This document shows, in pieces, positions 6,259 through 59,700 of a stretch of 64,000 bases of DNA. This DNA is from Klebsormidium nitens (taxonomy: Eukaryota > Plantae > Klebsormidiophyceae). The stretch covers positions 62,001 through 126,000 of the forward strand of contig DF237020.1 in the NCBI GenBank assembly GCA_000708835.1, given 5' to 3'. Both the position numbers and the translations under genes were made by a program. Every line of letters begins with the position of its first letter. The stretch's first letter is position 1. A model generated the notes under the pieces. The model was not told where the DNA came from. It made no database searches and worked only from the letters and a program-made list of their open reading frames with translations.

Positions 6259-8925
6259 CAACCACGTAGAGCTTGAACTTGTCTTTGAAGCTGCTCCTTG
6301 TCGCCCTTCATCTTCACCATTGCGTGACAAGGCTTGGCAGAATGCCAGACTAGTCCCGATCTAGAGACTGCATGAGCAGTTGATGAGAGCTGTTGAACAT
6401 CTGCCGTGCAGGAACAAGAAGCTTCGCAGACTTTCTCCACAGACTAAGGGATCTATTGTCAAGGTTTTGCTTCATTCGAGTTCCAAGCTGGGAGCAGCAG
6501 TCAATTCAGCAAGTCCACCCAATTTGATCGGAAGTGGTCGAGAAGCTAAAGCTTTTTGCTGTTCAAATCCTTTTTGCAATCTTGTCCTGTACGAAAGACA
6601 TCATGCAGCAGATTCACTAATCTGCTTGCAAGACTCTCCCTAATCCTGTTACGAGGAGTCTCAATCACCCAACACCTCCTTGAAAGATTCGAAGACGATT
6701 CGATCATCAATCGATCATCAATCGATCCGCTTCACGTGCTCCCACATTCAAGTTGGCTCTATATGGCATGTGCAGACGCTGGTCCATGCTCCCCTTGCAC
6801 AGGACGTTCAAGATGCAATCGAAGCAAGCTTTCGCGTGAAGTCACGTGGAGCCCAGCTTGTTCCCAAATATTGTCATGGTTAACACGATAGATCACAAAT
6901 GATGTACCACATACAGTGGCACGTCAAATTGACATAAAACAATCGAAATTTGAGACCGTTGGCTGGTACCGTACTCGAGCTGGACATGTACACATGGTCT
7001 TTGTAATGCTTATCTGCTCAGCTAGTGGGCATTGTAAAATCGTGCGCCAAATCATCATGACAAAGCTCCTGCATGGTCTGATGTGCAGCCCTTGGTTCCT
7101 CAGGTTCCTGAGTCAATTCGTTGATTTAACACTGCGGCTTACATGCATGACGGCATATAAAGCATGTCGCTACTCGTACTGCACACTTTACCAATCCACA
7201 GAAGCTTCTGTAGATACGATGCGCATACAATTTTAATGCTAGCCAGCAGAACTATTTGAACTGTCCAGATCTCATTCAAGCAATTTTATGCAACAAATAA
7301 TGCACGAGGTCACTCCTGGCCCTGGCACAGGCCACCGCGTACGTCCAGCTTTGCAAGAGATTAGAAGTCAGCTCCGCAAAACCAGTAAGCTGCACATAGT
7401 GAAGCTGGTATGTTTTGCTTGCCGCATACGCCCTTCACGAAGTTCGCCTTTACTGAGACAAATTCCATCTGAGGCTAGCTGATCGAAAAGACTTCTAGCA
7501 TCCACCGGCTTCCATGGCAGCCAACGTGCCAGCAGAAGGTATCAGGCATGCGAACGAACTTCTCACCATGGTAAGGTGCCCCTGTCTCCAGCTTTCATTC
7601 GTACTAGGTCCTGCAGCTGCATTCAAATTGGTGAGCTACGGGTCAAACTTGACATAGTAGATACGAGGCTGTGTATTGACAGACCTCTTCAGTATGTGAC
7701 GTTTGCTTGTCTGTGCTCAAGACTGACGATCCATAACGTCAGAGGATCTTCGACAGGCCACGTGTTGACAGGTGTCGACCACCGAACCAGGAAGAGCGGG
7801 CACACCCAGCTGCGCGTAGCAAATCCGTTGATATGGTTTGGCTTTGCTGAACCAACGGTCGAGCTTGATCATGCTACTGACCGTTGGGCTGATGACGGTC
7901 CTCTACAGCTGTCCAAGAAAACGAAGAGTTTCAAGGTCTTAAAACTCCCCCCTGCAATATGATTCTAACAGAACCTAGCTGTAGAGGAACCATGAGTGGT
8001 CACTCTGAAGGGGTTGGAAGTCAACTTCGAGAGAGCACTATATCAAGGAATTCATAGGAGAGGCGGCTAGGGCGCGATAAGCAGAGGGCGGGTCCCCTTG
8101 TTTGGGGGTTGTATTGCCACAGGCATGCAGCGCGCATACTAAGCTTCAATGAAGCAGACGAGGAAGTAGGCATCTTTTGATCTGGAAAGTGCGTTTTTGT
8201 TTACATGTCAAGTAAGAGAAGGTGGCACCAACACAGTGGCCTTGGAAAGCGATGTGCTTGTAATCTGGGGGTCCTGGTTGAGCAGGATGACAGAGAGTTC
8301 TGTTAGGCAGAACTTGTTTCAAAAGGTAAGGACACGAAAGGTCTTCACTAGTTGACCTTGTACGAACAGGGTAGCTACATGTATGGTGACCAAAAGGCTT
8401 ATAGCAAGAAAGGCATGTTGAAATGCACGCTTTGGTCCAAACTGCATGTTTGTGCTGTTGTGCAACACGGAGGAAACGCTTCTGTTACTTACGCGTCGAG
8501 GGTGTTCCAATGATCTGTCTCCTGCAAACTCCCAGTCGTAGGCCGTCAGATCAGCATGTGGCCTGAGGTCTGCGATCTGAAACTCATTTCTGTCGCTTGG
8601 CTTAATCCCTGACATTTATGTTCTGAGACACGGCCCTTTTGTCACTGTTTTTGACTGCATCCCAGAACTGAACTGGCCGTGATCTCGACTGTCTTGCTTT
8701 TGCAGATTTGACAGCCACAAGTGGAGAACGTCCGCCGACCATCGCTTCACAATTCGCAGTCAAGTTCTGGCGAAGACCTGTCAAGACAAATGAAGACGGC
8801 AATCTGAGAGACACCTGAGATCAGGCAGCTGTGCTGCAGATGCGCAGATGGACCTTTCAACGGCATGCAGCGTATAGTAGCCAGGAGCATAGCTGAAAGA
8901 GCACTCTCAGAAGACTTTCCTTGCA

Positions 8926-11900
8926 ATGAAGATGGAGACCCTTTTGGACACGACTGGCCAGCACTGCGTGGAAGAAGGCTCTTCCTTCTTGGAAGACAGT
9001 CCCCCTGGGACCCCGAGATCGCCTTCCGGGTTTGACACTTTCACAGGCAGCGGCATGCTTCTGAACTTCCTCACCCCAGTCAAGACTGGCCCTAGAAAGG
9101 GTGACACCTCGCACGAAGATGCCGCGTTCCTTTCTCCTACCAGCACGCTAGACGGTGGCACGTTCTCTCCGGATTCGGTCATCTCAGAAACAGACTGGAC
9201 GGTCTTTGACAGGCCAAAGCCGAGGGTGCTGGACTTTGGAGCGGTCAGCAGCGATCTGAGCAAAGTCACTCTCACAGAAGAGCAAGATGCCAAGGCAGAA
9301 GACATATGCTGTGCCGAGAATCCTAGGGGACGCCAGCTCCGCTTCCCTTCGTTCCCTAACACTGATGACAGCTGGATCACGGTGTTTGACAAAGAAGCCA
9401 GAGGAGATGATCCAGGTTTCCAGTCAAGGGACTTGACTCCGGCTTCTGAACCCAACGCTGTAGAAACAGGTGTCGTTTCTGAAACGTCTAGAAATGCAAA
9501 GGAAGATGACCACTCCCCCTCAGCTCCCAACCTTCCCACACCAGTTGCTCGCGCGCTCTTCGATCCCGCTCCGGAGTCACTTGCAGAGCACAGTCTCAAG
9601 GGCTTGCCAGTCTCAAGCTGGGAGAAGTCTTCTTTCGAAGTACAAAAACAGCCTACGCGATCCAGCCAATTCAAAGCGACCTGGGCCCGTACGAATATTC
9701 CGGGAGCGGCTGTTTTGCGAAGAACTGCAGACGGAGTGACCAAGCTAGAAAATAGAAGGGAAAGGGGAATCTTTGAGCATTCAAAGATCGGCTTGGACAC
9801 TGAAGAAGAGTGGACGGCAGTGAAACTTGAAGAGAGCTTGGCGCCAGGTAACAGAAAGTGTTTCCCGCTTTTTTGTATTGCGAAGCAGAGCAGAATCAAG
9901 ATGAATCAAGCACGCATTTTTTTAGCCCTCCCAGACACGAAATATGTTCGTTTGTTTTCAAATTCAATCTTGAATTCAGCTGCCTTCTGTGCATCAAAGC
10001 TTCTCCGACAAAATGACTATCGATACCCCTTAGCGATTCTCTGTTGCCTGAAGGTTGGATATACATCGTGATCACCCGAAGCTAGTCGCTCTATCTGCAG
10101 GCAGCGCTGTGGCTCCAAGCGTCACATCTGATCGCGGCCAGCACGCCCAAGTTCCCCTGAAGAAGCCTGTGTCTCCTCCAGCGTGAGTATTTCGTCAGTT
10201 GATACCTTTGTGCGGGTATTTCTTCCGTCAGTTGACGCGCTGGCGCAAAATCTGACCTACGCGTGATCTGAATCTTTAATTGCAGACCACGAGAATCACG
10301 CAAGGATAAAATGAACAAATTGGGATCCATTCGGCCTCGACAAATTCTGCAGAACTTTAAAAGAATTAAACACCTTTGCATCAATCCTGGACAGCTAGAA
10401 TAGCGCAGACGTATCGATCAGTCCAGTATAAGCCTCCTAAAAGAGTTTGTTGCCGGCGAGACGAGTTTTCCTTCCTCCTGTGCGCGCTCTCTCTTGTATA
10501 AGCTACGCATCGAGAAACATTTTCCGCTGGCCACCGCGATCCACCGTAAGGAATTTTGTTGCTGCTCAAACTTTTCTCCTCGTCACACAGGACTGGCAGC
10601 AAGCTCGCGGCGCGCAGGGGCGAGCACGTGGCGCGCGCGCTCAACAATCTCAGGATTGGCGGAAAGCCGAGACCCGGGGAGAAAGCGTCGCCCCGCTGCA
10701 GCCCCAGAACCCATGGCGACGAAGCGCGCGCCCTCTTTGGCGCGATGCTCGAGCCCTCTCCAGACTCCACTCCGTTCAGGTGAGTCGCGCTACATTGAAT
10801 TTACTTTCTCAGTATTTTGCGGACGTCCCAAGGAGTGCGTGCTGTTTCGGCGTCACGTCTTCCAAAAGAAATGACTACCTGTTGGTAGTCAGGAAGATCC
10901 TTCAGAATGCTCAGGTGTATCTCGAAGAAATCGTGTCGTTTAAAATCAGTTGCAGAACCGTCAAAACTTCTTCCAATAATCGTTTCACTTTATACCTTTT
11001 CTAAGGACGCTTAAACCCAAGCAAGCAAGTGATTCTGTGTCTCCCGGCCGTCTCCTCGCAGTACGTCCTCCGAGTCCGACTGGAGCCCCGACCAACCGGG
11101 GCAAACCACACCGACCCCGCAGCACGAGTCGGGCAAACGACCGCCCTTGCCCCCGTACGGCCCCCGCCTCAACCGAAGCGCGCGGCGCTCTAACCTGGCC
11201 GCCATCGCGGAGCAGCCGCCGCGCGTCGAGCGGAAGACCAAGCTCGGGCGCGCGCAAAACCCCGCGCGCGCGGCCGCGAGCGACGAGGAAAAGGACGACT
11301 CTGCGTGGGAGCGGGCGAAGGCTCTGCGAGTGAACATTACGCCCCGGGCCACGATCCCGAAGCCAAGCGTCTCGCTCGACTCCGAGGACTACTTCGAGAT
11401 CCAGGATCCGCTCAGCGGCGGAAGGACGGAAACCGGAAGTGGCCGCGGCAGTCGCGGTTCGGACGAGGGTTCGCGGGGTTTGGACCCGCGGCTGAGCCCG
11501 CGGCTCGCGCGGCTCCTGCGGCGCGTCCCGGGCATTGGCGCGCTGACGACCGAGCGGATGGAGAGGCTGGTGGAGTCGGCGCACATGCTGGAGTACGGGT
11601 CGGGGGAGGTGATCGCCAAGACGGTGAGTGAGCCGGAAATCATGACGAGGTTATTGTGCATCAAACCGGATCAACCTGTTGTGTTCCTGCTTTTTCCGAA
11701 ACTTGTTCACTAGAGCAAGAAGTCAAGTGTTAAATTACGGACCTAAGAAATTACCATTCATATTGAAAGCGTGTACGTAGAGGGTTTGTGATGGCGCTTG
11801 AAGACGCAACCTCAATCTCTTGCGAAACACCCCGACTCTGATTTCTATTTGTGTTATGTATTTCATCACAGAAAGACGAGATCCCATCGAGACCTCTGTT

Positions 11901-51521: not shown

Positions 51522-53045
51522 GGTGCTGCATGTACCACGAGGCTCCTTGCCACTTGGTCCTTGCTAGGTGGCGAAAAGGTTGGCTTGCGTCAAAATATAT
51601 CCAACGGAATTTCATTCCGCCGGACTCGGGGGTTCCGGACCCGGTTCCCTTGCGACCGGTACTCGAGCTAGCTCTTTCATGTGTTTGCTGAATCCATCCC
51701 GGTGCAGAGGTATAATAAACGGCATTGCCCGGCTGTTCCGGTCAATGCATGGGGGCAGGGCCGATCCCGCGGAATCGCGGAATCTTGTGACGGTCGGGCG
51801 GCTAGCGGTCTCGCGGCGGCGCGGCATGCCGCGGCCGGGCGCCAACGAGCACGCGGCCATCGCGGCCAGCGCGGCACGCGGCCGGCAGGCCTGGAGCTAG
51901 CGCATCGCCGTCAAGCTGCTCCCATTTGTTCCAACATAGGTACTAATTGCACAGCTTTAGAAGCATTTCATCTTCGTGCCAGAGAGAAGCTTCTTATAGT
52001 CAACTAACAAACCCTTATTTGCCATTGTCAAGGTGACGGACAAGGCGCTCTCCCTACTAATATGCCCCCTGGGTCACGCCTTTGCCCAGCAGACCGTCAA
52101 GGACCGCGGTAGAAAGCAGGTTTCGAAGTTGACGGGATATTGTTTGCATGTGTTGAGCGGCCGAGAAGTAAGCAAAGCGCGGGAATCGTCTCGAGCAGAA
52201 GGTGTCGCCACAAAGGATGCCAATATATACTTGCTCTTGGCGGTTACGAAGTTCACTTATGTTAAACCCCTTCGAGCGTTGTAAAGAAAAAGCCTGCAGC
52301 TTGTCTTGATGACGCATATGCTGCAGCATAAGCGAAGCAGCAGTCCACGTGATCATTAAGCTGGATGGAGATCACGCAGACGGCCGTACGCAACACACGC
52401 AAAGCGTCTTAACGTCAGCTCTGTCGACTTTGGAGTCATTTCCGTCTCTGAACTAAGTTTAAATGATTTGTCACTCTAGAGCTCGACTTTCTTTCTGAAG
52501 CCCTTGAGTAGCGCGCCTACGTAGTCGTTTCTGTGCCCACCTCACGAATGCCGTCGAAGTGACTGCCAAAGGCAGCGGAACATGATGGCAAGTTGCGGTA
52601 CACTGACGTATACTGTATACTGTGGCACAGCCATCATTGCGAAAATGGAGGCCTGATACCGTAATCATGAACCTCGAACTGCAAGCTCATGGCAAGCATC
52701 GAAGCTAGTGAGTTCAGCTTCGCTTCGAAAAGCTCCGGTTAAGCCCTGCAGGTGCTTATATACGTTGCACTGAGTACGATTCAAAGTTACGGAGCATTTT
52801 TTCAGGGTAAAGGAGCAAGCATTGAGGTGGTCATTCTGGACAGCTGCCCGGTCTTTGGTAAGCCTTTGCGTCTAAAGGTGCTGATCAAGGTACAGCTTCC
52901 GGTTACTCTACCCAAAACGTGCTGGCCTCATACTCCATTCGCGAATATGCCTTGAAACCGACCTCGCTGTTACAGAGTAGACCGTCCGTTCTTCTCACAC
53001 GGAAGCCTATTCGCACACGGTCGCACGTCGTTCTGCGACCCGTAC

Positions 53046-53131
53046 GATCATGCCACGTGACACATCGAACGGCAGGTGACGTTACCAGGTCACTTCGCCC
53101 ACAAGCTCCCCGTTTTCCTTGACCATATAAA
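53046..53131 (+). promoter_or_regulatory. Putative upstream promoter of candidate ncRNA A (G-box CACGTG, GGTGACGTTACC, CCCACAAG USE-like motif, TATA-like box)
   Basis: The motifs are conserved at identical spacing in the second arm (54371-54286, minus strand). Confidence 0.4.
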
Positions 53132-53154
53132 GGTGGCATGGTGCGGCTTGACTC

Positions 53155-53348
53155 AGCAGATGGTGAGAAGCCGCGCCGAGCAGCCTGCTCGTGCGCCGTG
53201 AGCCCCGGCTCTGCCGAGGTGTCTGCTCACTGGGGGTGATCCCCCGACGTCGAGGCCGCAGGCCTCCGTCTGGCAGGGGGGGCTCCCGCGGGAGCTCCCT
53301 CCGGCCGGGGCAACGCCCCAGAGGCTTAGGAAACATCCTCTGCCGTCT
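53155..53348 (+). ncRNA. Candidate structured ncRNA gene, copy A (unassigned family)
   Basis: The 5' agatggtgag can pair with the 3' ctctgccgtct (G-U pairs possible only in this orientation), and aagcc with ggctt. At least 6 internal hairpins. CATATAAA lies ~30 bp upstream. Confidence 0.5.
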
Positions 53349-54068
53349 ACAACCCAATCCACACACTCTCAAGATGGGCATGTCTTCAGGTGCTTCTCAG
53401 CCAACTTGCCTTGTTGAACAAACCCATTGTAAGAACAGTCTGGCGTTTAGAGGCCGTGTGCTACGAAAGCTGCATTTGACATCGGCAACTAGTTCGTTGC
53501 CACCCGGGGAAGATAAAGGTCATCGGGGCTTCAAAAATAGTGGTAGACCTTGTCATTTTGCACACTTCAAAGGTCGGGAAACTAAATAATCTCATCGGTT
53601 TTGTGACAAAAGAATGGGTCATGCAGCGAGATAGCTCCGTCTAATACACTCCAATTGCATCAGCCCATCCTTCGAATTCCTATCAATGTCCGCGGTCAAA
53701 CATGTTCTCTACTAGTTTACTCGCCTTCTTTTGAGCGCCTCAAGTCAGCATGTTTTTGCTCGTACAGGCACTTCACGCGTGCGCAACCGTTCGATTCCAA
53801 AAATAGTGCATCCTTTGTTCGAGCTGAAAGCTTGAGCAAACCGACTTATAGTCTGAACCGCCAAACAATCATCTGAACAAACCCGGTCGCTTGTTCCAAT
53901 CCGGACTTTAATCTCACTCTTCCATGCTCAAGGTGCATTTCGCGATTCCAATAGTGTATTGTCGGCTATCATAGTATTCCCAGCCTAGAAAATAGTGTTA
54001 GTTTGTTCAACGAGGAGTCGGCCCTTCATGCGACTTGTGGGGATATGGTTGGACTTTGGAATGGGTTA

Positions 54069-54262
54069 AGACGGCAGAGGATGTTTCCCAAGCCTCTGGG
54101 GCGTTGCCCCGGCCAGAGGGAGCTCCCGCGGGAGCCCCCCCTGCCAGACGGAGGCCCGCGGCCTCGACGTCGGGGGATCACCCCCAGTGAGCAGACACCC
54201 CGGCAGAGCCCGGGCTTACGGCGCACGAGCAGGCTGCTCGGCGCGACTTCTCACCATCTGCC
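54069..54262 (-). ncRNA. Candidate structured ncRNA gene, copy B (paralog of copy A, convergent)
   Basis: About 96% identical to copy A, with the same upstream spacing (CATACAAA). The downstream CAttccaaAGTccAA (54063-54049) fits the plant Pol II snRNA 3'-box consensus CA(N)3-10AGTNNAA. Confidence 0.5.
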
Positions 54263-56783
54263 GAGACAGGCAGCACCCGGCCGCATTTGTATGCTCACAG
54301 AAAACGGAGACCTTGTGGGTGAAATGACATGGTAACGTCACCTGTCGTTCGATGCGTCACGTGTCAAGATCTGACGGCTTCGATTAATCGAGCGCTTCTC
54401 GACGTCTGACGCTGTGAAGCTCAGAATGGTGGGGGGATATTCGACGAAAACGCACCCTTTGCGTAGAGCTGAAGCGAGCCGGCAAATGGAACGAACTAGC
54501 TTTCAAGCAGCTGTCTTTGGTATCCAAAGATCACCACTCGGCGTGAGTCAGTCCGAAGCTGAAGCGCAATGAATACAATACAGCGACCCGCAGCGCCAAT
54601 TTGGAATCATTGATTTCGCAAGTACGAAAATTTTCGGACTCCTCCGTTGGCATCCACCGCTTTTGAAGTTTCCACTACTTCAAGGCAAGAAAACACTGCA
54701 AAGCATTTGAGACCACGAAACTGCTGTGCTCTTGTAATCATTGGTATTCTCCCATGATGCATACCAAGGACAGCGCAACACCAACGTTTTGGGATGGCGC
54801 CCTCCCTTGATGTCTAGATTATTGGCGGCCGAAAAGCAAGTGTGTCCTTTTCGGATCGAGTTTGTAGTTGCTGCGTTCTGTGACTAAGTTAAAATTCAAA
54901 GGCCCACTTCTCGGTCGAGACCAGAATACAATCTTTCCAGGAGACTTGTACGATTCATGGACATCAATTCCGAGAGAGCAGAAGCCTGAGCAGGCGCGTA
55001 CCAGAGCGCTGATGTGGTGCGGATTCGAGGAGCTTCAAACGGGCGAACCGGATAAAAGCAGCTGGAAGTGAACTTTCCAGTGGAACTCTCTCGTAAAAAC
55101 CAGTCAGACGGCTTACATCGAAGTCGGCTGCGAACTTATTCTCAAGTGACAGTATGAGTCGAAGCGAAGAGTACAGTCAAGTTTCCACCGTTACAAATGC
55201 CTCAGGGGCTTTCCCAAACTCAAGGAGCATTCGATAGATCAGTGGGTATCCTTTGGCTCTTACTTCTGTCATTCTCTCTAAAAGAACAGAACTCATAATC
55301 GAAAGAGGCAAACAGCATCGAGACACCAAATCGGCCGCCGCTTGTGGCGCAGCTCAATCTCCTTACGCGAGAATGATTGTGATCGATCCGTCTGCAAGCG
55401 CGCACGCAAGGCCCTTGAAGCCCTGCAAAATTGATCTTGGCAGGAGCTCGACTGAAGCCTGGACCCAGCTTGGATCGTAACCAGTTGTCCTTTGCAGTTT
55501 AGATTGCTTACGCGGACTTGTAGTCAATACTTAACTCAAGAACGCAGCTTCGACGATTTGACGAACAAATTGATAAAGTGAGCTGGTCGCCTTCGGTCAG
55601 GCCACTGGCCGGATGCAAGGCTTCGAAGAGAAGGGACTCGTCAATCTTCCTTCGACTCAATGGTCAAGAATGCAAATACACCAATCTGCGGACCATCTGA
55701 TTACACAGGACTTTCTGTGTCTACCAGCATTCGCGCACGACGTTTGGAACAAGAGATGCTAAAGCGTCGAAGCCCTGGCGGTGCGTAAGTCAAAGGGAAG
55801 GGATGAAGTTCCATACCCCCAGCTTCAGATTGACGCATCCAAAAGAATCGGCTACGTTTTGGTTGCTCGTCCGATGGGCTCTTTGTGCATTTGTCGTCAT
55901 ATCTTTTGGCTTCAGGTTTGTGTACCTTCAGTCCAATGTTGAGACGGCCGTGCTGAGAACCAGTCAGCCTTCCGGGCCATTGCTCAATGTCCTGCACTGG
56001 TACGTCGTTATCGTAAGAGATACGGTGCATCCTTCTGCCGCTTCTCATTGTCTACGGAAATTCTGTGATGCCTGAAAATCGAAATGACTCCTTCTGGAAT
56101 TTAAGCAGAATGCCTTTCGAGGCGTGCGAACGTGCATGGATCAGCTGCAAGGATGCGAGCCTGGTGATTTGGTAGCATTGGCACCTCATATGGATACATT
56201 TAGGCAATCCGCATGCATTTCGGCAATCAGCGTAACAGCTCTGAGGTACGGTTTGCCACGCATTCGTCACAGGCTGGCAACTTCTGACGGTACCTTACCC
56301 CACTTAATGCTTTTACGGCTATACACGAGGCCACTACGATATAGCCAGATTGCTGGGCATGGCTATTTTGCTTAGAGACACGTGTTTTGAGCTTCTTGTG
56401 TACCGTGTATAACAACTTCCGTCAAATCGAGGATCTCTGCCTAGCACAATTGTGGGCTCAGTCAGTACCGTCACAAAAGCTCAATCTACAATATATACTC
56501 ACGCAAACGTCTACCCTAGATTTATCGGAGATCAATTTCTACCACACGGCTTTAAAGTTTTGTTCAGCCGTCACAGCTATGCGCACAAAGAATCTTGTTG
56601 CACTTCCCTCGTATGTACATCTAAGCACTCCCTGAATCGGATCGACTGTGAGAGCCACAATTATGTGACACACTCGCACTGCCTGTCCCTATACCAACAG
56701 CAATGCTCCCTACATTTAGCAGATCCAATCTCATCATAAATACCAACCAATTCCAGACCTACACTATATTTTGTGGTGTTCTC

Positions 56784-59700
56784 TCACACAATTGTTGCCA
56801 AAAGCAAAACAGAGCCGCCTATGTACAGCATGGACTGGTCAACCACGCCTCGCAGAAGGGACAGCCGGTCAGCGGTGAAATCGGACCCGCCTTGGAGCAG
56901 CTGAAAGATCCTGGCGTGCAGGGGGAGGAGGAGAAGGGTCCCCGCGGCCGCTACCGCTTGGGTCTTCGCAAGAATGCCAATCTGCAGGTAAGACTCGTAA
57001 AGTGAGGGCGGAAGGCGCTGCAACGGAGCGGAGTGCCGTGCACACGAGCAGAAGCTGGCGTGTTCGCTTGTATTCAACGACTGTGGAACAAGGGACGATG
57101 GTAGCGCACATCTTCTCACAAACCTACCAAGACATCTGTCACTACGGCTTTGTAAGAAAAAAAACGTGCAGTGCACGATCCGGGAGAAAAACTGGAGTGG
57201 GAGTTTGACCGCCAGACTGCAACCCGACGCTTTTACCTCTTGAGCAGCACTTCTGCCTCCCCTGCTTAACAAAACAGCGTCCATAGGAACTACTGGACTA
57301 ATTAGGAAACGGAGAAGACATGCCCGCTTCGGCAGCGCTTCCACACATTCATCATAGCAGACCAACCAACGAGAACAAGCGTCTCACCAGGACAGCGTTG
57401 GCGGCGGCAAGCGCAATGCCCGCAGCGGCCGTCCCGACCCGACGTCCGAAGCAGACGGCGACCGTCCGGACGCCCGCGGCTTTGTCCCCGACCATGTCCC
57501 CGACGTCCATCAAAATTTCCCGGCACAGAATGCACAGGAAGAAGAACAGCGATACCTGCCCAGTCCGTGCCACCCCGGCTGCCCCGCCTGCAAATCGCAA
57601 GAGGCGGACTTCAGTGGGTTGTCTGAGTTACGCAACTTTTTTGTTGATTTGCCTTGTCTTGCCTATCGGGTTTGAAGTTTGGCGACTGAAGCCGTCCCGG
57701 CGAACTTTGTTCGCATCGAGAGATGGCTCTTGAGCCTGGCCACAAAATCACGCCGGGATCCTCTTGATTGTGCCCCTACAGGCAAAATCTACCTCTGCCA
57801 TGATAGCGCCGGGAAAGAAAGTCTACACAAAACGATGTCCGGCTTTCATGTCTGCACGTTACTCATAGCGAATTACTGAGGAGGACTAGCGTGCAGAAAT
57901 ACAGTAGTACCAAGAAATTTGCGGACTGGTAATATGTGTGACGACAGGCCGAAATCCACAGATTATCACGCGCCGTTGCAATCCTACTCGCAGTTGGGGT
58001 GGTGAGAGGAGTCCCCATGCACATCTCCCTACTCTCCCCTTGAATCTCGCAAGCAGGTTAATCTATACCCCTTACCTGCCACTAGTCCCCCGGCCAGGAT
58101 CGACGAAGCAATGATCGCCGCAACAATGACGTTCTTAACCACGAGCAGCCTTTTCAGGAAGGGGGTATAAATATAGGTGGCCACGGCAGCCCCCCCCACG
58201 AGCAGCCGCAGCGTCATGGGCTCCAGGCAGCAGATGCCGATCACGGCTGCTCCGTACAGGCATCCCGCTGCGAGCTCAGCCTGGGCATAGAAAGAGTGGA
58301 AGGTGAGCGGGGCGGACAGGAAAAGTTAAGAAACGGAGAATGAGTCGAGGTGGAAGGGGTTCTAGAACACCGGATGGTGGTTTGACAGAGGGGAAAGGAA
58401 AAAGGTGTCGATGGCTGCATGAAAATAAAGGCAGAGGGAAAATACAGGAAGATAAGCAGGAGGGGGATATGGAAAGGGAGAAACCCTCTGGCTCTACGAA
58501 GCTTGTGATCGCCTTTCAGACCTAGTGTAAGAAGCTTAGCTTGTTGAAACATTCCGTAGGCTGCCGAATGCCGATGCCATGCACTCCTGTTCTTTGACCG
58601 CCAGCCAGTTCTGGAGACATAAGATGCATCAGTAACAAACAAAACCACACTCATCTTACAGCTTTTCCAAGCTGGTTCTTACCTTCGGAGCCAGAACGTA
58701 AAAAGCATCGCAGTCATAATCCTTTAACTGCTTCCTACTGTCCATTTGTGCTCAAGAATCTACCCCCCGAAATGCTTGGATTCTTTTTGGTCGTCTTGGT
58801 CCATGTCAAATTATCAAGTCCATTTGTCTGGAAAAGTAAGCATAGCTTTGCGGCCTTACGTCATCTGGGGCGACCTCCCCAGTCATCAGCGGCGTGTCCC
58901 GCTCGTTCGCTTGATCGGTCCCGGAGCGGAAGTCGAACACGTCGTTTGCCAGCATGGACGCAACTGCTATGAGAGCGGAACAGGCGGCAGTGATCCACAC
59001 CTTCGGCATCAAAATCACTCTGGCGTCATGACCGGATGCCATCCAGGCCCCAAGGACAACGAGAAGAAAGGAAGGGAAGTAGTTCTGGAGACGGGCCATT
59101 TTGAGGAGGCCCTCCGCGGCCCTGCAGAACAGGAAGATCAATCGTGTTGAGATCGAAAAGATGAACAGAAATGTACAGCCTTTGACAGAAACAACTCTCG
59201 CTACAGGTCGATGCAGTGAAATAAGGAGAGAAGGGGGAGAGTGATTTGGAAACGGGCCTTATTGAGGAAACCCTCGGGAGCCCTGCGGAAAGGAGAGATG
59301 TACAGTGGGAGATGTACGGTGGTTTAGGAAGAAGACCGGGAAGGATGACAGATAACGCATAATTTAAGATCTTAACTGAATATGCACCTCGGGGGCAGAA
59401 AGTCAAAATCAGAAAAGAGGAGGGTATGTATCAGAAAATGAGCCATATCCAGATAAGGAATCATTTAAATCTCAACTGCCGTATGCACCTCGGGGGCAGG
59501 AGTCAAAACCAGAAAAGAGGAGGGTATGTATCATGAGATGAGTGAAATCCAGGAGGCCTTTGCGACGTGCAAGCGCGAAAGATACTTAGTTGGGAAACGG
59601 GGACAAATAAGTAGCGACCGTCAACAAGAGGCGGCAGAAAGTCAAGAGGAAAAGAAGAGTGCCAATCAAGGTAAAAACGGATAGGTGTGATGAAAGCCTT

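What the first reader, a model, noticed from the sequence alone, without database searches (positions are those of the whole stretch)
53046..54371. Convergent pair of unrecognised, highly structured ~195-nt ncRNA-like genes with an snRNA-style promoter
Seen: two gap-free inverted 303-bp arms in a non-coding stretch between the MIP and UbiA genes. Identity is graded: ~85% over the outer 86 bp (CACGTG, GGTGACGTTACC, CCCACAAG, CATA[T/C]AAA), ~65% over the 20 bp after the TATA-like box (length conserved), and ~96% over the inner 197 bp. The body closes on itself (agatggtgag/ctctgccgtct; aagcc/ggctt) and has at least 6 hairpins: gcgccgagcag-cc-tgctcgtgcgc; gtgagc...gctcac; ggggg-tgat-ccccc; gaggcc-gca-ggcctc; ggggggctccc-gc-gggagctccct; ggggc-aac-gcccc. 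G-U pairs work only when it is read away from the TATA box. Two copy differences turn Watson-Crick pairs into G-U (aagCc->aagTc; ttAgg->ttGgg), though at least one (gtGagc->gtAagc) breaks a pair. Established: plant snRNA-type genes use USE+TATA, with a CA(N)AGTNNAA 3' box for Pol II; copy B has such a box and neither copy has a nearby T-run. I find no U1/U2/U4/U5/U6/U11/U12 5' motif, Sm site, U3 boxes, MRP GAAAGUCCCC, SRP helix 8, tRNA A/B boxes or telomere template. Inference: a lineage-specific or undescribed small RNA gene duplicated in inverted orientation. A transposon TIR would be expected to be most conserved at its outer ends, the reverse of what is seen.
Basis: partly seen in the sequence, partly recalled or inferred. 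Interest (0 to 1): 0.8.

Follow-up and report, generated by a model that had tools for sequence, protein, structure and literature searches.

The report
Orphan small-RNA gene pair, inverted
Two mirror-image copies of a GC-rich, hairpin-packed stretch of about 195 bases, each behind an snRNA-style promoter, most likely encode an undescribed small RNA of this green alga, but no transcript or outside relative was found and a close relative lacks them at the same spot.

Summary
Arms 53040-53348 and 54069-54377 are a gap-free 309-nt inverted repeat. Identity is graded: 85% upstream, 70% between the TATA box and the start, and 95.9% in the 194-nt body (upstream vs body, p=3e-5).

The bodies are 72% GC islands in ~49% GC spacer and fold far better than shuffles. 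Each follows a CCCACA (USE-like) plus TATA pair; chance predicts 0.05 such pairs per window.

No Rfam family matches, even at E<=10. There is no Sm site, no U-run, no C/D or H/ACA boxes and no telomere template. No coding signal was found.

New here: a closely related alga (Logan contig L006, exons 74-92% identical, collinear UbiA-MIP) has only 1.07 kb between the two genes, against 5.04 kb here, and carries no copy. The pair is therefore a lineage-specific gain or loss. No relatives turned up in any collection I could reach.

Best reading (0.5): convergent genes of an orphan snRNA-type small RNA. It is probably the family this scan already reported elsewhere in this genome (s1-321848, s1-299517), though I could not compare sequences.

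Weak points:
- The polymerase is unclear. USE-TATA spacing of 19 nt is Pol III-like, yet no T-run follows.
- A plant 3' box follows copy B only.
- Copy B's TATA is degenerate.
- The structure is only weakly strand-specific.
- There are no expression data.

The parts
53040..53348 (+). Arm A of the inverted repeat (promoter-like region plus RNA body)
   Evidence: the repeat finder I1, 309 nt, 90% complementary; alignment
54069..54377 (-). Arm B of the inverted repeat, read on the minus strand
53054..53086 (+). Upstream conserved blocks of copy A: CACGTG (53054-59), CATCGAACG, GGTGACGTTACC (53075-86). The mirror positions in B are 54331-54363
   Evidence: Blocks invariant between copies. TGACGT-type words are reported as over-abundant genome-wide in earlier scan notes, so their meaning here is uncertain
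53097..53105 (+). USE-like element GCCCACAAG of copy A (copy B: ACCCACAAG at 54320-54312, minus strand)
   Evidence: CCCACA-N17-32-TATAWA occurs once in 64 kb against 0.05 expected. The core matches CCCAYA-type USEs listed in PMC8287931
53124..53131 (+). TATA box CATATAAA of copy A. Copy B has the degenerate CATACAAA at 54293-54286 (minus strand)
53155..53348 (+). Predicted RNA body, copy A (~194 nt, 72% GC, multi-hairpin, 5'/3' closing stem)
   Evidence: 95.9% identical to copy B; z=-3.9; consensus fold with 68 pairs; covariance-model score 233.9 bits
54069..54262 (-). Predicted RNA body, copy B
   Evidence: 231.3 bits
53349..53360 (+). Short conserved tail after the closing stem (9/13 identical; mirror 54057-54068)
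54049..54063 (-). Match to the plant snRNA 3' box CA(N)3-10AGTNNAA, 6 nt after copy B. There is no counterpart after copy A
   Evidence: background 1.2-1.5% of positions; consensus from PMC5079582
53349..54068 (.). 720-nt unique spacer between the arms (~47% GC, no Pfam hit, no repeat elsewhere in the window)

Best explanation
Each arm is an independent, externally promoted small-RNA gene of the plant snRNA type.

Inferred mechanism:
- A SNAPc-type USE (GCCCACAAG or ACCCACAAG) and a TATA box 19 nt further on place initiation about 25-30 nt downstream, at ~53155-53158 on the plus strand and ~54262-54259 on the minus strand.
- The ~195-205-nt, 72% GC transcript folds into a multi-branch structure. 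A stem joins its 5' and 3' ends and encloses five robust hairpins plus a less certain region.
- It would act as a protein-bound structural small nuclear or nucleolar RNA of an undescribed class. It is not Sm-class, not C/D or H/ACA, and not telomerase, SRP, MRP or P RNA.
- The two genes converge across a 720-nt spacer.
- The body stays near-identical while the promoter drifts. The cause is purifying selection and/or gene conversion with other family members.

Shown: the anatomy, the conservation gradient, the folding signal, the lack of any known family or coding signal, and absence from the syntenic site of a close relative.

Inferred: transcription, the start and end points, which polymerase acts, and any function.
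For: - The inverted repeat and its conservation gradient are confirmed (p=3e-5).
- The USE-like core plus TATA occurs only here in 64 kb, against 0.05 expected by chance, and sits directly upstream of where high conservation begins.
- The USE core agrees with CCCAYA-type USEs across green algae and plants (PMC8287931).
- The bodies are outliers for folding and GC content within the intergenic region.
- All 8 body differences fall in unpaired columns or keep a pair in the consensus fold.
- Copy B folds better than 98% of same-type random mutants of A.
- Hairpin H5 has two G-U pairs in both copies that would be A-C mismatches on the other strand.
- No coding signal: 6 of the 8 body differences change the residue in the long antisense ORF, there is no Pfam hit and no protein relatives.
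- No target-site duplication beyond chance.
- Earlier scan notes describe three further copies elsewhere in this genome with the same body-more-conserved-than-promoter pattern. This is a lead only; I could not check it.
Against: - There are no expression data.
- There are no homologues outside the genome, so there is no real covariation. Two near-identical copies cannot provide it.
- Copy B's TATA is TACAAA.
- The USE-TATA gap of 19 nt fits neither Arabidopsis class: 23-24 nt for Pol III, 32-34 nt for Pol II.
- If Pol III acts, the first T4 run lies 208 nt (copy A) and 77 nt (copy B) past the body, and these are not homologous.
- If Pol II acts, a 3' box follows copy B only, and there is no Sm site or snoRNA box to stabilise the RNA.
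- The hairpins are nearly perfect short palindromes, so the fold is almost as good on the opposite strand.
- This genome's spacers are reported as generally palindrome-rich.
- The pair is absent from the orthologous intergenic region of a close relative.
Confidence: 0.5

Rival explanations
1. A non-autonomous mobile or dispersed DNA repeat, such as a foldback- or MITE-like element with 309-bp terminal inverted repeats, or a promoter-bearing LTR-like fragment. Its GC-rich palindromes would act, if at all, at the DNA level. The promoter-like motifs would be incidental or belong to the element.
For: - The inverted-repeat architecture with a unique 720-nt core.
- Presence here but absence from the collinear site of a close relative, whose intergenic region is 4 kb shorter.
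- More copies elsewhere in the genome, according to earlier notes.
- Hairpins are near-perfect palindromes that fold on either strand.
- A 5/7 match, CTGCGAC / CTTCGAT, directly flanks the arms.
- In LTR elements U3 drifts faster than R-U5, which could mimic the gradient.
Against: - The flanking match is not significant: 21% of random boundary pairs do as well.
- The ends are the least conserved part, and they lack TG..CA or any known TIR terminus.
- No transposase, reverse transcriptase or other protein remnant lies in or around it.
- There is no third copy or fragment in 64 kb.
- Apparent copy number is low.
- No primer-binding site or polypurine tract is present.
Confidence: 0.2
2. A hairpin-RNA (inverted-repeat siRNA or proto-miRNA) locus. 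Read-through from one promoter across the spacer would give a transcript whose arms pair into a ~200-300-bp duplex, which Dicer-like enzymes would then cut.
For: - The inner 194 nt of the arms are 96% complementary, with a 720-nt loop.
- Copy A has no terminator-like signal.
- USE-driven small-RNA precursors exist in plants: Cuscuta miRNA loci with a U6-like promoter, listed.
Against: - It explains neither the dense internal hairpins and GC island of each arm nor why the body is more conserved than the promoter.
- It does not explain non-inverted copies elsewhere (unverified).
- The promoters lie inside the arms on both sides.
Confidence: 0.1
3. A highly divergent member of a known RNA class that Rfam models miss, for example U11, MRP, 7SK-like, Y or vault RNA.
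For: Several of these classes use USE/TATA-type promoters and have paired 5'/3' ends. Algal versions are poorly sampled in Rfam.
Against: - cmscan found nothing relevant even at E<=10.
- There is no run of three U anywhere in the body, so no Sm site or Pol III tail.
- There is no template for the Klebsormidium telomere repeats CCCTAAAA/CCTAAAA.
- The C/D-like words AUGGUGA and CUGC lack the G-A pairs of a kink-turn.
- ACA is not conserved at the 3' end.
Confidence: 0.08
4. A neutral relic: a recent inverted segmental duplication of a GC-rich intergenic island, with the inner part homogenised by arm-to-arm (possibly GC-biased) gene conversion. No function.
For: - Five of the eight body differences are A in copy A against G in copy B.
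- Palindromic arms are known to convert.
- The relative lacks the sequence.
Against: - High identity starts exactly one TATA-to-start distance after the TATA box.
- A USE+TATA pair at this geometry is expected 0.05 times per window.
- The same gradient is reported for non-inverted copies (unverified).
Confidence: 0.1

Closest known systems
Plant snRNA-type genes with USE + TATA promoters (U1/U2/U4/U5 by Pol II; U6, U3, 7SL, MRP and telomerase RNA by Pol III)
   Same: External promoter with a CCCACA-core element and a TATA box at fixed distance. Small, non-coding, structured product. Multi-copy, with bodies more alike than flanks. One copy has a CA(N)3-10AGTNNAA 3' box.
   Different: The RNA matches none of these classes. 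USE-TATA spacing (19 nt) fits neither Arabidopsis class. There is no T-run terminator and no Sm site, and the 3' box follows one copy only.
Plant/algal telomerase RNA (AtR8/TR; Fajkus et al. 2021, PMC8287931)
   Same: A lineage-variable, structured RNA of ~200-300 nt found through its USE/TATA promoter, with 5'/3' closing helices.
   Different: No template complementary to CCCTAAAA/CCTAAAA, no T-rich terminator, and several near-identical copies.
Foldback / long-TIR non-autonomous DNA transposons
   Same: Long inverted arms around a short unique core. Present or absent between close relatives.
   Different: No significant target-site duplication. The termini are the least conserved part. There is no sign of high copy number and no transposase relic.
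USE-driven miRNA loci of Cuscuta campestris (bioRxiv 10.1101/2022.07.06.498962, title and abstract only)
   Same: An snRNA-type promoter used for a lineage-specific hairpin RNA that is not an snRNA.
   Different: The hairpins here have 5-12-bp stems, too short for Dicer-type precursors. The product would be a ~195-nt multi-hairpin RNA.

Membership tests
Plant snRNA-type (USE+TATA) gene | USE (land-plant consensus RTCCCACATCG; CCCAYA-type cores in green algae) upstream of the start | tested here: met
   GCCCACAAG at 53097-53105 and ACCCACAAG at 54320-54312, at identical positions in both copies. Only the core matches. This alga's own snRNA promoters could not be fetched for calibration.
Plant snRNA-type (USE+TATA) gene | TATA box about 25-30 nt before the start | tested here: inconclusive
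   Copy A has TATAAA at 53126-53131, 24 nt before the conserved body begins. Copy B has TACAAA.
Plant snRNA-type (USE+TATA) gene | USE-TATA spacing class (Arabidopsis: 23-24 bp for Pol III, 32-34 bp for Pol II) | tested here: not met
   19 nt lie between the aligned USE end (53106) and TATAAA (53126). This is nearer the Pol III class but matches neither. The rule may differ in this alga.
Plant snRNA-type (USE+TATA) gene | 3' end signal: a T-run (Pol III) or the 3' box CA(N)3-10AGTNNAA (Pol II) just after the coding region | tested here: inconclusive
   The first T4 lies 208 nt (A) and 77 nt (B) downstream. A 3' box follows copy B only, at 54063-54049.
Plant snRNA-type (USE+TATA) gene | A discrete, stable small transcript | not testable with these tools
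   No RNA-seq access.
Any Rfam 15 family (snRNAs, U3, MRP, P, SRP, 7SK, Y, vault, snoRNAs, ribozymes) | Covariance-model match | tested here: not met
   No hits at gathering score in the whole window. At E<=10 only two weak, unrelated hits appeared.
Sm-class snRNA | Sm site RAU(3-6)GR | tested here: not met
   The body contains no run of three U (sequence).
Plant-type telomerase RNA | Template of more than one telomere repeat (Klebsormidium: CCCTAAAA/CCTAAAA) | tested here: not met
   No such word or permutation, and no AAAA at all, in the body.
Box C/D or H/ACA RNA | RUGAUGA plus CUGA next to a terminal stem; or ANANNA hinge plus ACA 3 nt from the end | tested here: not met
   AUGGUGA and CUGC lack the G-A pairs. 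ACA follows the stem in copy A only (UAA in B).
TIR DNA transposon / foldback element | Target-site duplication flanking the inverted repeats | tested here: not met
   The best candidate matches 5/7; 21% of random boundary pairs do as well.
TIR DNA transposon / foldback element | Many dispersed copies | not testable with these tools
   There are only two copies in 64 kb. The whole genome is not searchable here.
Hairpin-RNA / inverted-repeat siRNA locus | Long near-perfect inverted repeat inside one transcript, giving 21-24-nt small RNAs | tested here: inconclusive
   The repeat exists. Neither transcript span nor small RNAs can be tested.

The most novel reading that the evidence does not exclude
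A Klebsormidium-lineage-specific, abundant, non-Sm small nuclear or nucleolar RNA: the RNA subunit of an undescribed RNP. It would be made from snRNA-type promoters and spread by DNA-level gene duplication so recently that a congeneric-level relative lacks it at this locus.
Probability: 0.35. Interest if true: 0.65.

Novelty: new member of a known kind. Interest (0 to 1): 0.45.

Why it matters
Klebsormidium is a reference point for the algal ancestry of land plants, and its non-coding RNA set is almost unexplored. A multi-copy, promoter-equipped, strongly structured RNA with no family would be a new RNP component to chase.

It would also be a natural test case for how USE/TATA spacing chooses between Pol II and Pol III outside land plants.

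If it turns out to be a mobile palindromic repeat instead, it is a warning that snRNA-like promoter words plus good folding are not enough to call an RNA gene in this palindrome-rich genome.

Tried and rejected
**Known RNA families**
- Rfam at gathering score and at E<=10: nothing relevant. The S-element hit at 54362-54428 (27.6 bits against a gathering score of 47) is outside the body and is taken as chance.
- tRNA scan: none.
- Tandem repeats: none relevant.

**Searches for relatives**
- I translated two antisense frames of the body, to catch spurious ORF calls on homologous DNA. All searches were blank:
  - metagenome, viral and prokaryotic contig scans;
  - two word-index protein searches;
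  - one exhaustive HMMER search, which gave only low-complexity Arg/Pro hits.
- These blanks are weak evidence. This alga's own ORF-level calls are evidently not in those databases: MIP exon 1 had no identical hit.
- Exact-ORF look-ups also failed. Two of them were doomed anyway, because GTG and TTG starts translate as V and L.

**Other tests**
- Synteny route: it succeeded in finding relatives of the locus but not of the RNA.
- Telomerase RNA: rejected for lack of a template.
- Spliced-leader RNA (the AUG|GUGAG donor-like word at 53160-53167): rejected, because the leader exon would be under 10 nt and there is no Sm site.
- Protein-coding exon or micro-ORF: a 13-codon ORF (53160-53201) keeps both of its differences silent (AGC/AGT, TGA/TAA). 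With two sites this is not evidence.
- Mutation simulation on folding energy: it favours structure-preserving change but is not strand-decisive.
- Pol I / rDNA-spacer origin: considered but untestable.
- Organism name: I could not verify it. 'Klebsormidium nitens' comes only from earlier scan notes.
Full report
**1. The observation**

The repeat finder reports one inverted pair, 53040-53348 and 54069-54377. It is 309 nt, gap-free, 90% complementary and 720 nt apart. Pairwise alignment shows weak homology running on to 53360/54057.

Identity by segment:

| Segment | Identical | Percent |
|---|---|---|
| Outer 86 bp | 73/86 | 85% |
| TATA to conserved start | 16/23 | 70% |
| Body 53155-53348 | 186/194 | 95.9% |
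| 13-column tail | 9/13 | 69% |

Upstream against body gives Fisher p=3.4e-5, so the gradient is not noise.

The body folds to -113 kcal/mol, z=-3.9 against dinucleotide shuffles. I scanned 194-nt windows across the whole 5-kb intergenic region. The two bodies are the extremes for both folding z-score and GC content: 0.72 against about 0.49 around them.

No third copy or fragment exists in the 64-kb window by blastn, nhmmer or a covariance model run with filters off.

**2. Context**

UbiA exons lie on the minus strand at 57.36-58.33 kb. The repeat therefore sits in intergenic DNA, upstream of the peptidase gene and downstream of UbiA.

No ORF in or around the repeat hits Pfam. The long antisense ORFs across the arms differ at 6 residues for 8 nucleotide changes and have no relatives. 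They are not coding.

I searched exons singly and by reference. I did not build or search any joined (spliced) protein model.

**3. Promoter-like region**

Blocks invariant between the copies are CACGTGAC, CATCGAACG, CAGGTGACGTTACCA, CCCACAAG and CCGTTTTC.

The pattern CCCACA-N17-32-TATAWA occurs once in the window, against 0.05 expected. High conservation begins 24 nt after TATAAA. That is the geometry of a TATA-directed start near 53155-53158.

The CCCACA core fits the USE cores tabulated for green algae and other Diaphoretickes, and the land-plant USE (PMC8287931).

Three caveats:
- Copy B has TACAAA at the TATA position.
- When the cores are aligned to the 11-nt land-plant USE, the USE-TATA gap is 19 nt. 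That is shorter than the Arabidopsis Pol III class (23-24) and far from the Pol II class (32-34).
- Earlier scan notes say TGACGT-type words are strongly over-represented throughout this genome. The upstream TGACGT block therefore need not be a specific promoter element.

**4. The 3' end**

No T4 run follows the body for 208 nt in copy A or 77 nt in copy B, and those runs are not homologous. This argues against a classic Pol III unit.

The plant Pol II snRNA 3' box CA(N)3-10AGTNNAA (PMC5079582) starts 6 nt after copy B, at 54063-54049 on the minus strand. Copy A has none. Background frequency of such a match is 1.2-1.5% of positions. The polymerase remains undecided.

**5. Structure**

Five hairpins recur in the MFE, centroid and two-copy consensus folds. 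In body numbering they span 19-42, 78-91, 92-116, 118-152 and 153-165.

The region 43-77 and the way GGCUU (169-173) pairs are ambiguous. GGCUU can pair with AAGCC (14-18) or with GAGCC (46-50).

In the consensus fold all eight differences are either unpaired or keep a pair. Examples are G-U to A-U at 46:173 and U-A to U-G at 45:174. That fold was fitted to both sequences, and two copies cannot show true covariation.

In a mutation simulation:
- Copy B is more stable than 98% of same-type random mutants of A.
- Copy A is more stable than 87% of random mutants of B.
- The antisense strand gives a mirror-image result (0.29 and 0.017), so the test does not fix the strand.

Strand support rests on two points. 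Two G-U pairs in the 118-152 hairpin become A-C on the other strand. The sense/antisense MFE gap is 3 kcal/mol for A and 18 kcal/mol for B.

The helices are short and nearly perfect palindromes, often with 3-nt loops. That is equally what DNA-level palindromes look like.

**6. What it is not**

- Rfam 15 gives no hit at gathering score in the whole window and nothing relevant at E<=10.
- The body has no run of three U, so it has no Sm site and no La-type tail.
- It has no AAAA, so it has no template for the Klebsormidium telomere repeats.
- The C/D-like words lack the G-A pairs of a kink-turn.
- ACA after the closing stem is present in one copy only.

Searching exon 1 of the peptidase gene found three proteins. 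One, P0004 at 66% identity, lies on a 15.8-kb Logan contig from run SRR23617307, fetched as L006.

L006 is collinear with the window. UbiA exons are 86-92% identical at the DNA level and peptidase exons 74-86%. It is a close relative.

The distance from the last aligned UbiA segment to the peptidase start differs sharply:

| Locus | Coordinates | Length |
|---|---|---|
| L006 | 8953-10024 | 1.07 kb |
| Window | 56571-51528 | 5.04 kb |

L006 has no copy of the unit by nhmmer, blastn or covariance model, and no CCCACA...TATA pair. The same holds for the more distant L007 (a JGI metagenome contig).

The pair is therefore not conserved at this locus between close relatives. It was gained in this lineage or lost in the other. 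Fast birth-and-death is typical of snRNA gene families (my own knowledge), but presence/absence also fits a mobile element.

The candidate target-site duplication, CTGCGAC / CTTCGAT (5/7), is matched by 21% of random boundary pairs.

**8. Earlier scan notes**

Two followed-up notes (s1-321848, s1-299517) describe three copies of a ~430-base unit elsewhere in this genome. They call it a hairpin-rich ~195-nt RNA with an snRNA-style promoter and a core more conserved than the promoter.

This is very probably the same family, so the scan has met it before on other DNA. I could not compare sequences, so I treat it as a lead. If it is the same family, the gradient is not a by-product of arm-to-arm conversion in this inverted repeat. 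The organism name Klebsormidium nitens also comes only from those notes.

**9. Verdict**

The anatomy is best explained by a convergent pair of genes for an orphan, structured, snRNA-type small RNA (confidence 0.5). The rivals are:
- a mobile or dispersed palindromic repeat (0.2);
- a hairpin-RNA locus (0.1);
- a neutral duplication homogenised by gene conversion (0.1);
- a divergent member of a known class (0.08).

Expression data and a genome-wide copy census would settle it. Neither was reachable with these tools.

Noticed in passing
L006:6936-7636 vs window 57378-57619; also L006:5049-5283 vs window 59063-59129: In the related alga's UbiA gene, the 5' part of one exon (window 57513-57619) matches four places spaced 100-150 bp apart: L006 6936-7008 (92%), 7048-7152 (76%), 7252-7333 (82%) and the true exon at 7397-7636 (87%). 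A second exon shows two partial upstream copies. These look like the decayed 'exon-edge echoes' that earlier scan notes describe for this genome.
   Followed up: no
window 51528-56571 vs L006:8953-10024: The UbiA-to-peptidase intergenic region is five times longer here than in the close relative. Nothing in it aligns, although the flanking exons are 74-92% identical.
   Followed up: partly
window 54034-54041 (minus strand): A third exact CCCACAAG lies 28 nt downstream of copy B in the same orientation, with no TATA after it. The window holds 5 such 8-mers against 2.3 expected.
   Followed up: partly
window 53160-53201 (+) and 54257-54216 (-): A 13-codon ORF (MVRSRAEQPARAP) starts at the body's ATG|GTGAG. 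Both copy differences inside it are silent (AGC/AGT Ser, TGA/TAA stop). There are too few sites to mean anything.
   Followed up: partly
window 54362-54428 (+): A sub-threshold Rfam hit to S-element (RF00490, 27.6 bits against a gathering score of 47, E=0.045) lies at the outer edge of arm B. I take it as chance.
   Followed up: no
window 53061-53069: CATCGAACG in the upstream region is one mismatch from the plant histone-promoter nonamer CATCCAACG, as I recall it, and lies next to ACGT-core words. The resemblance was not tested.
   Followed up: no
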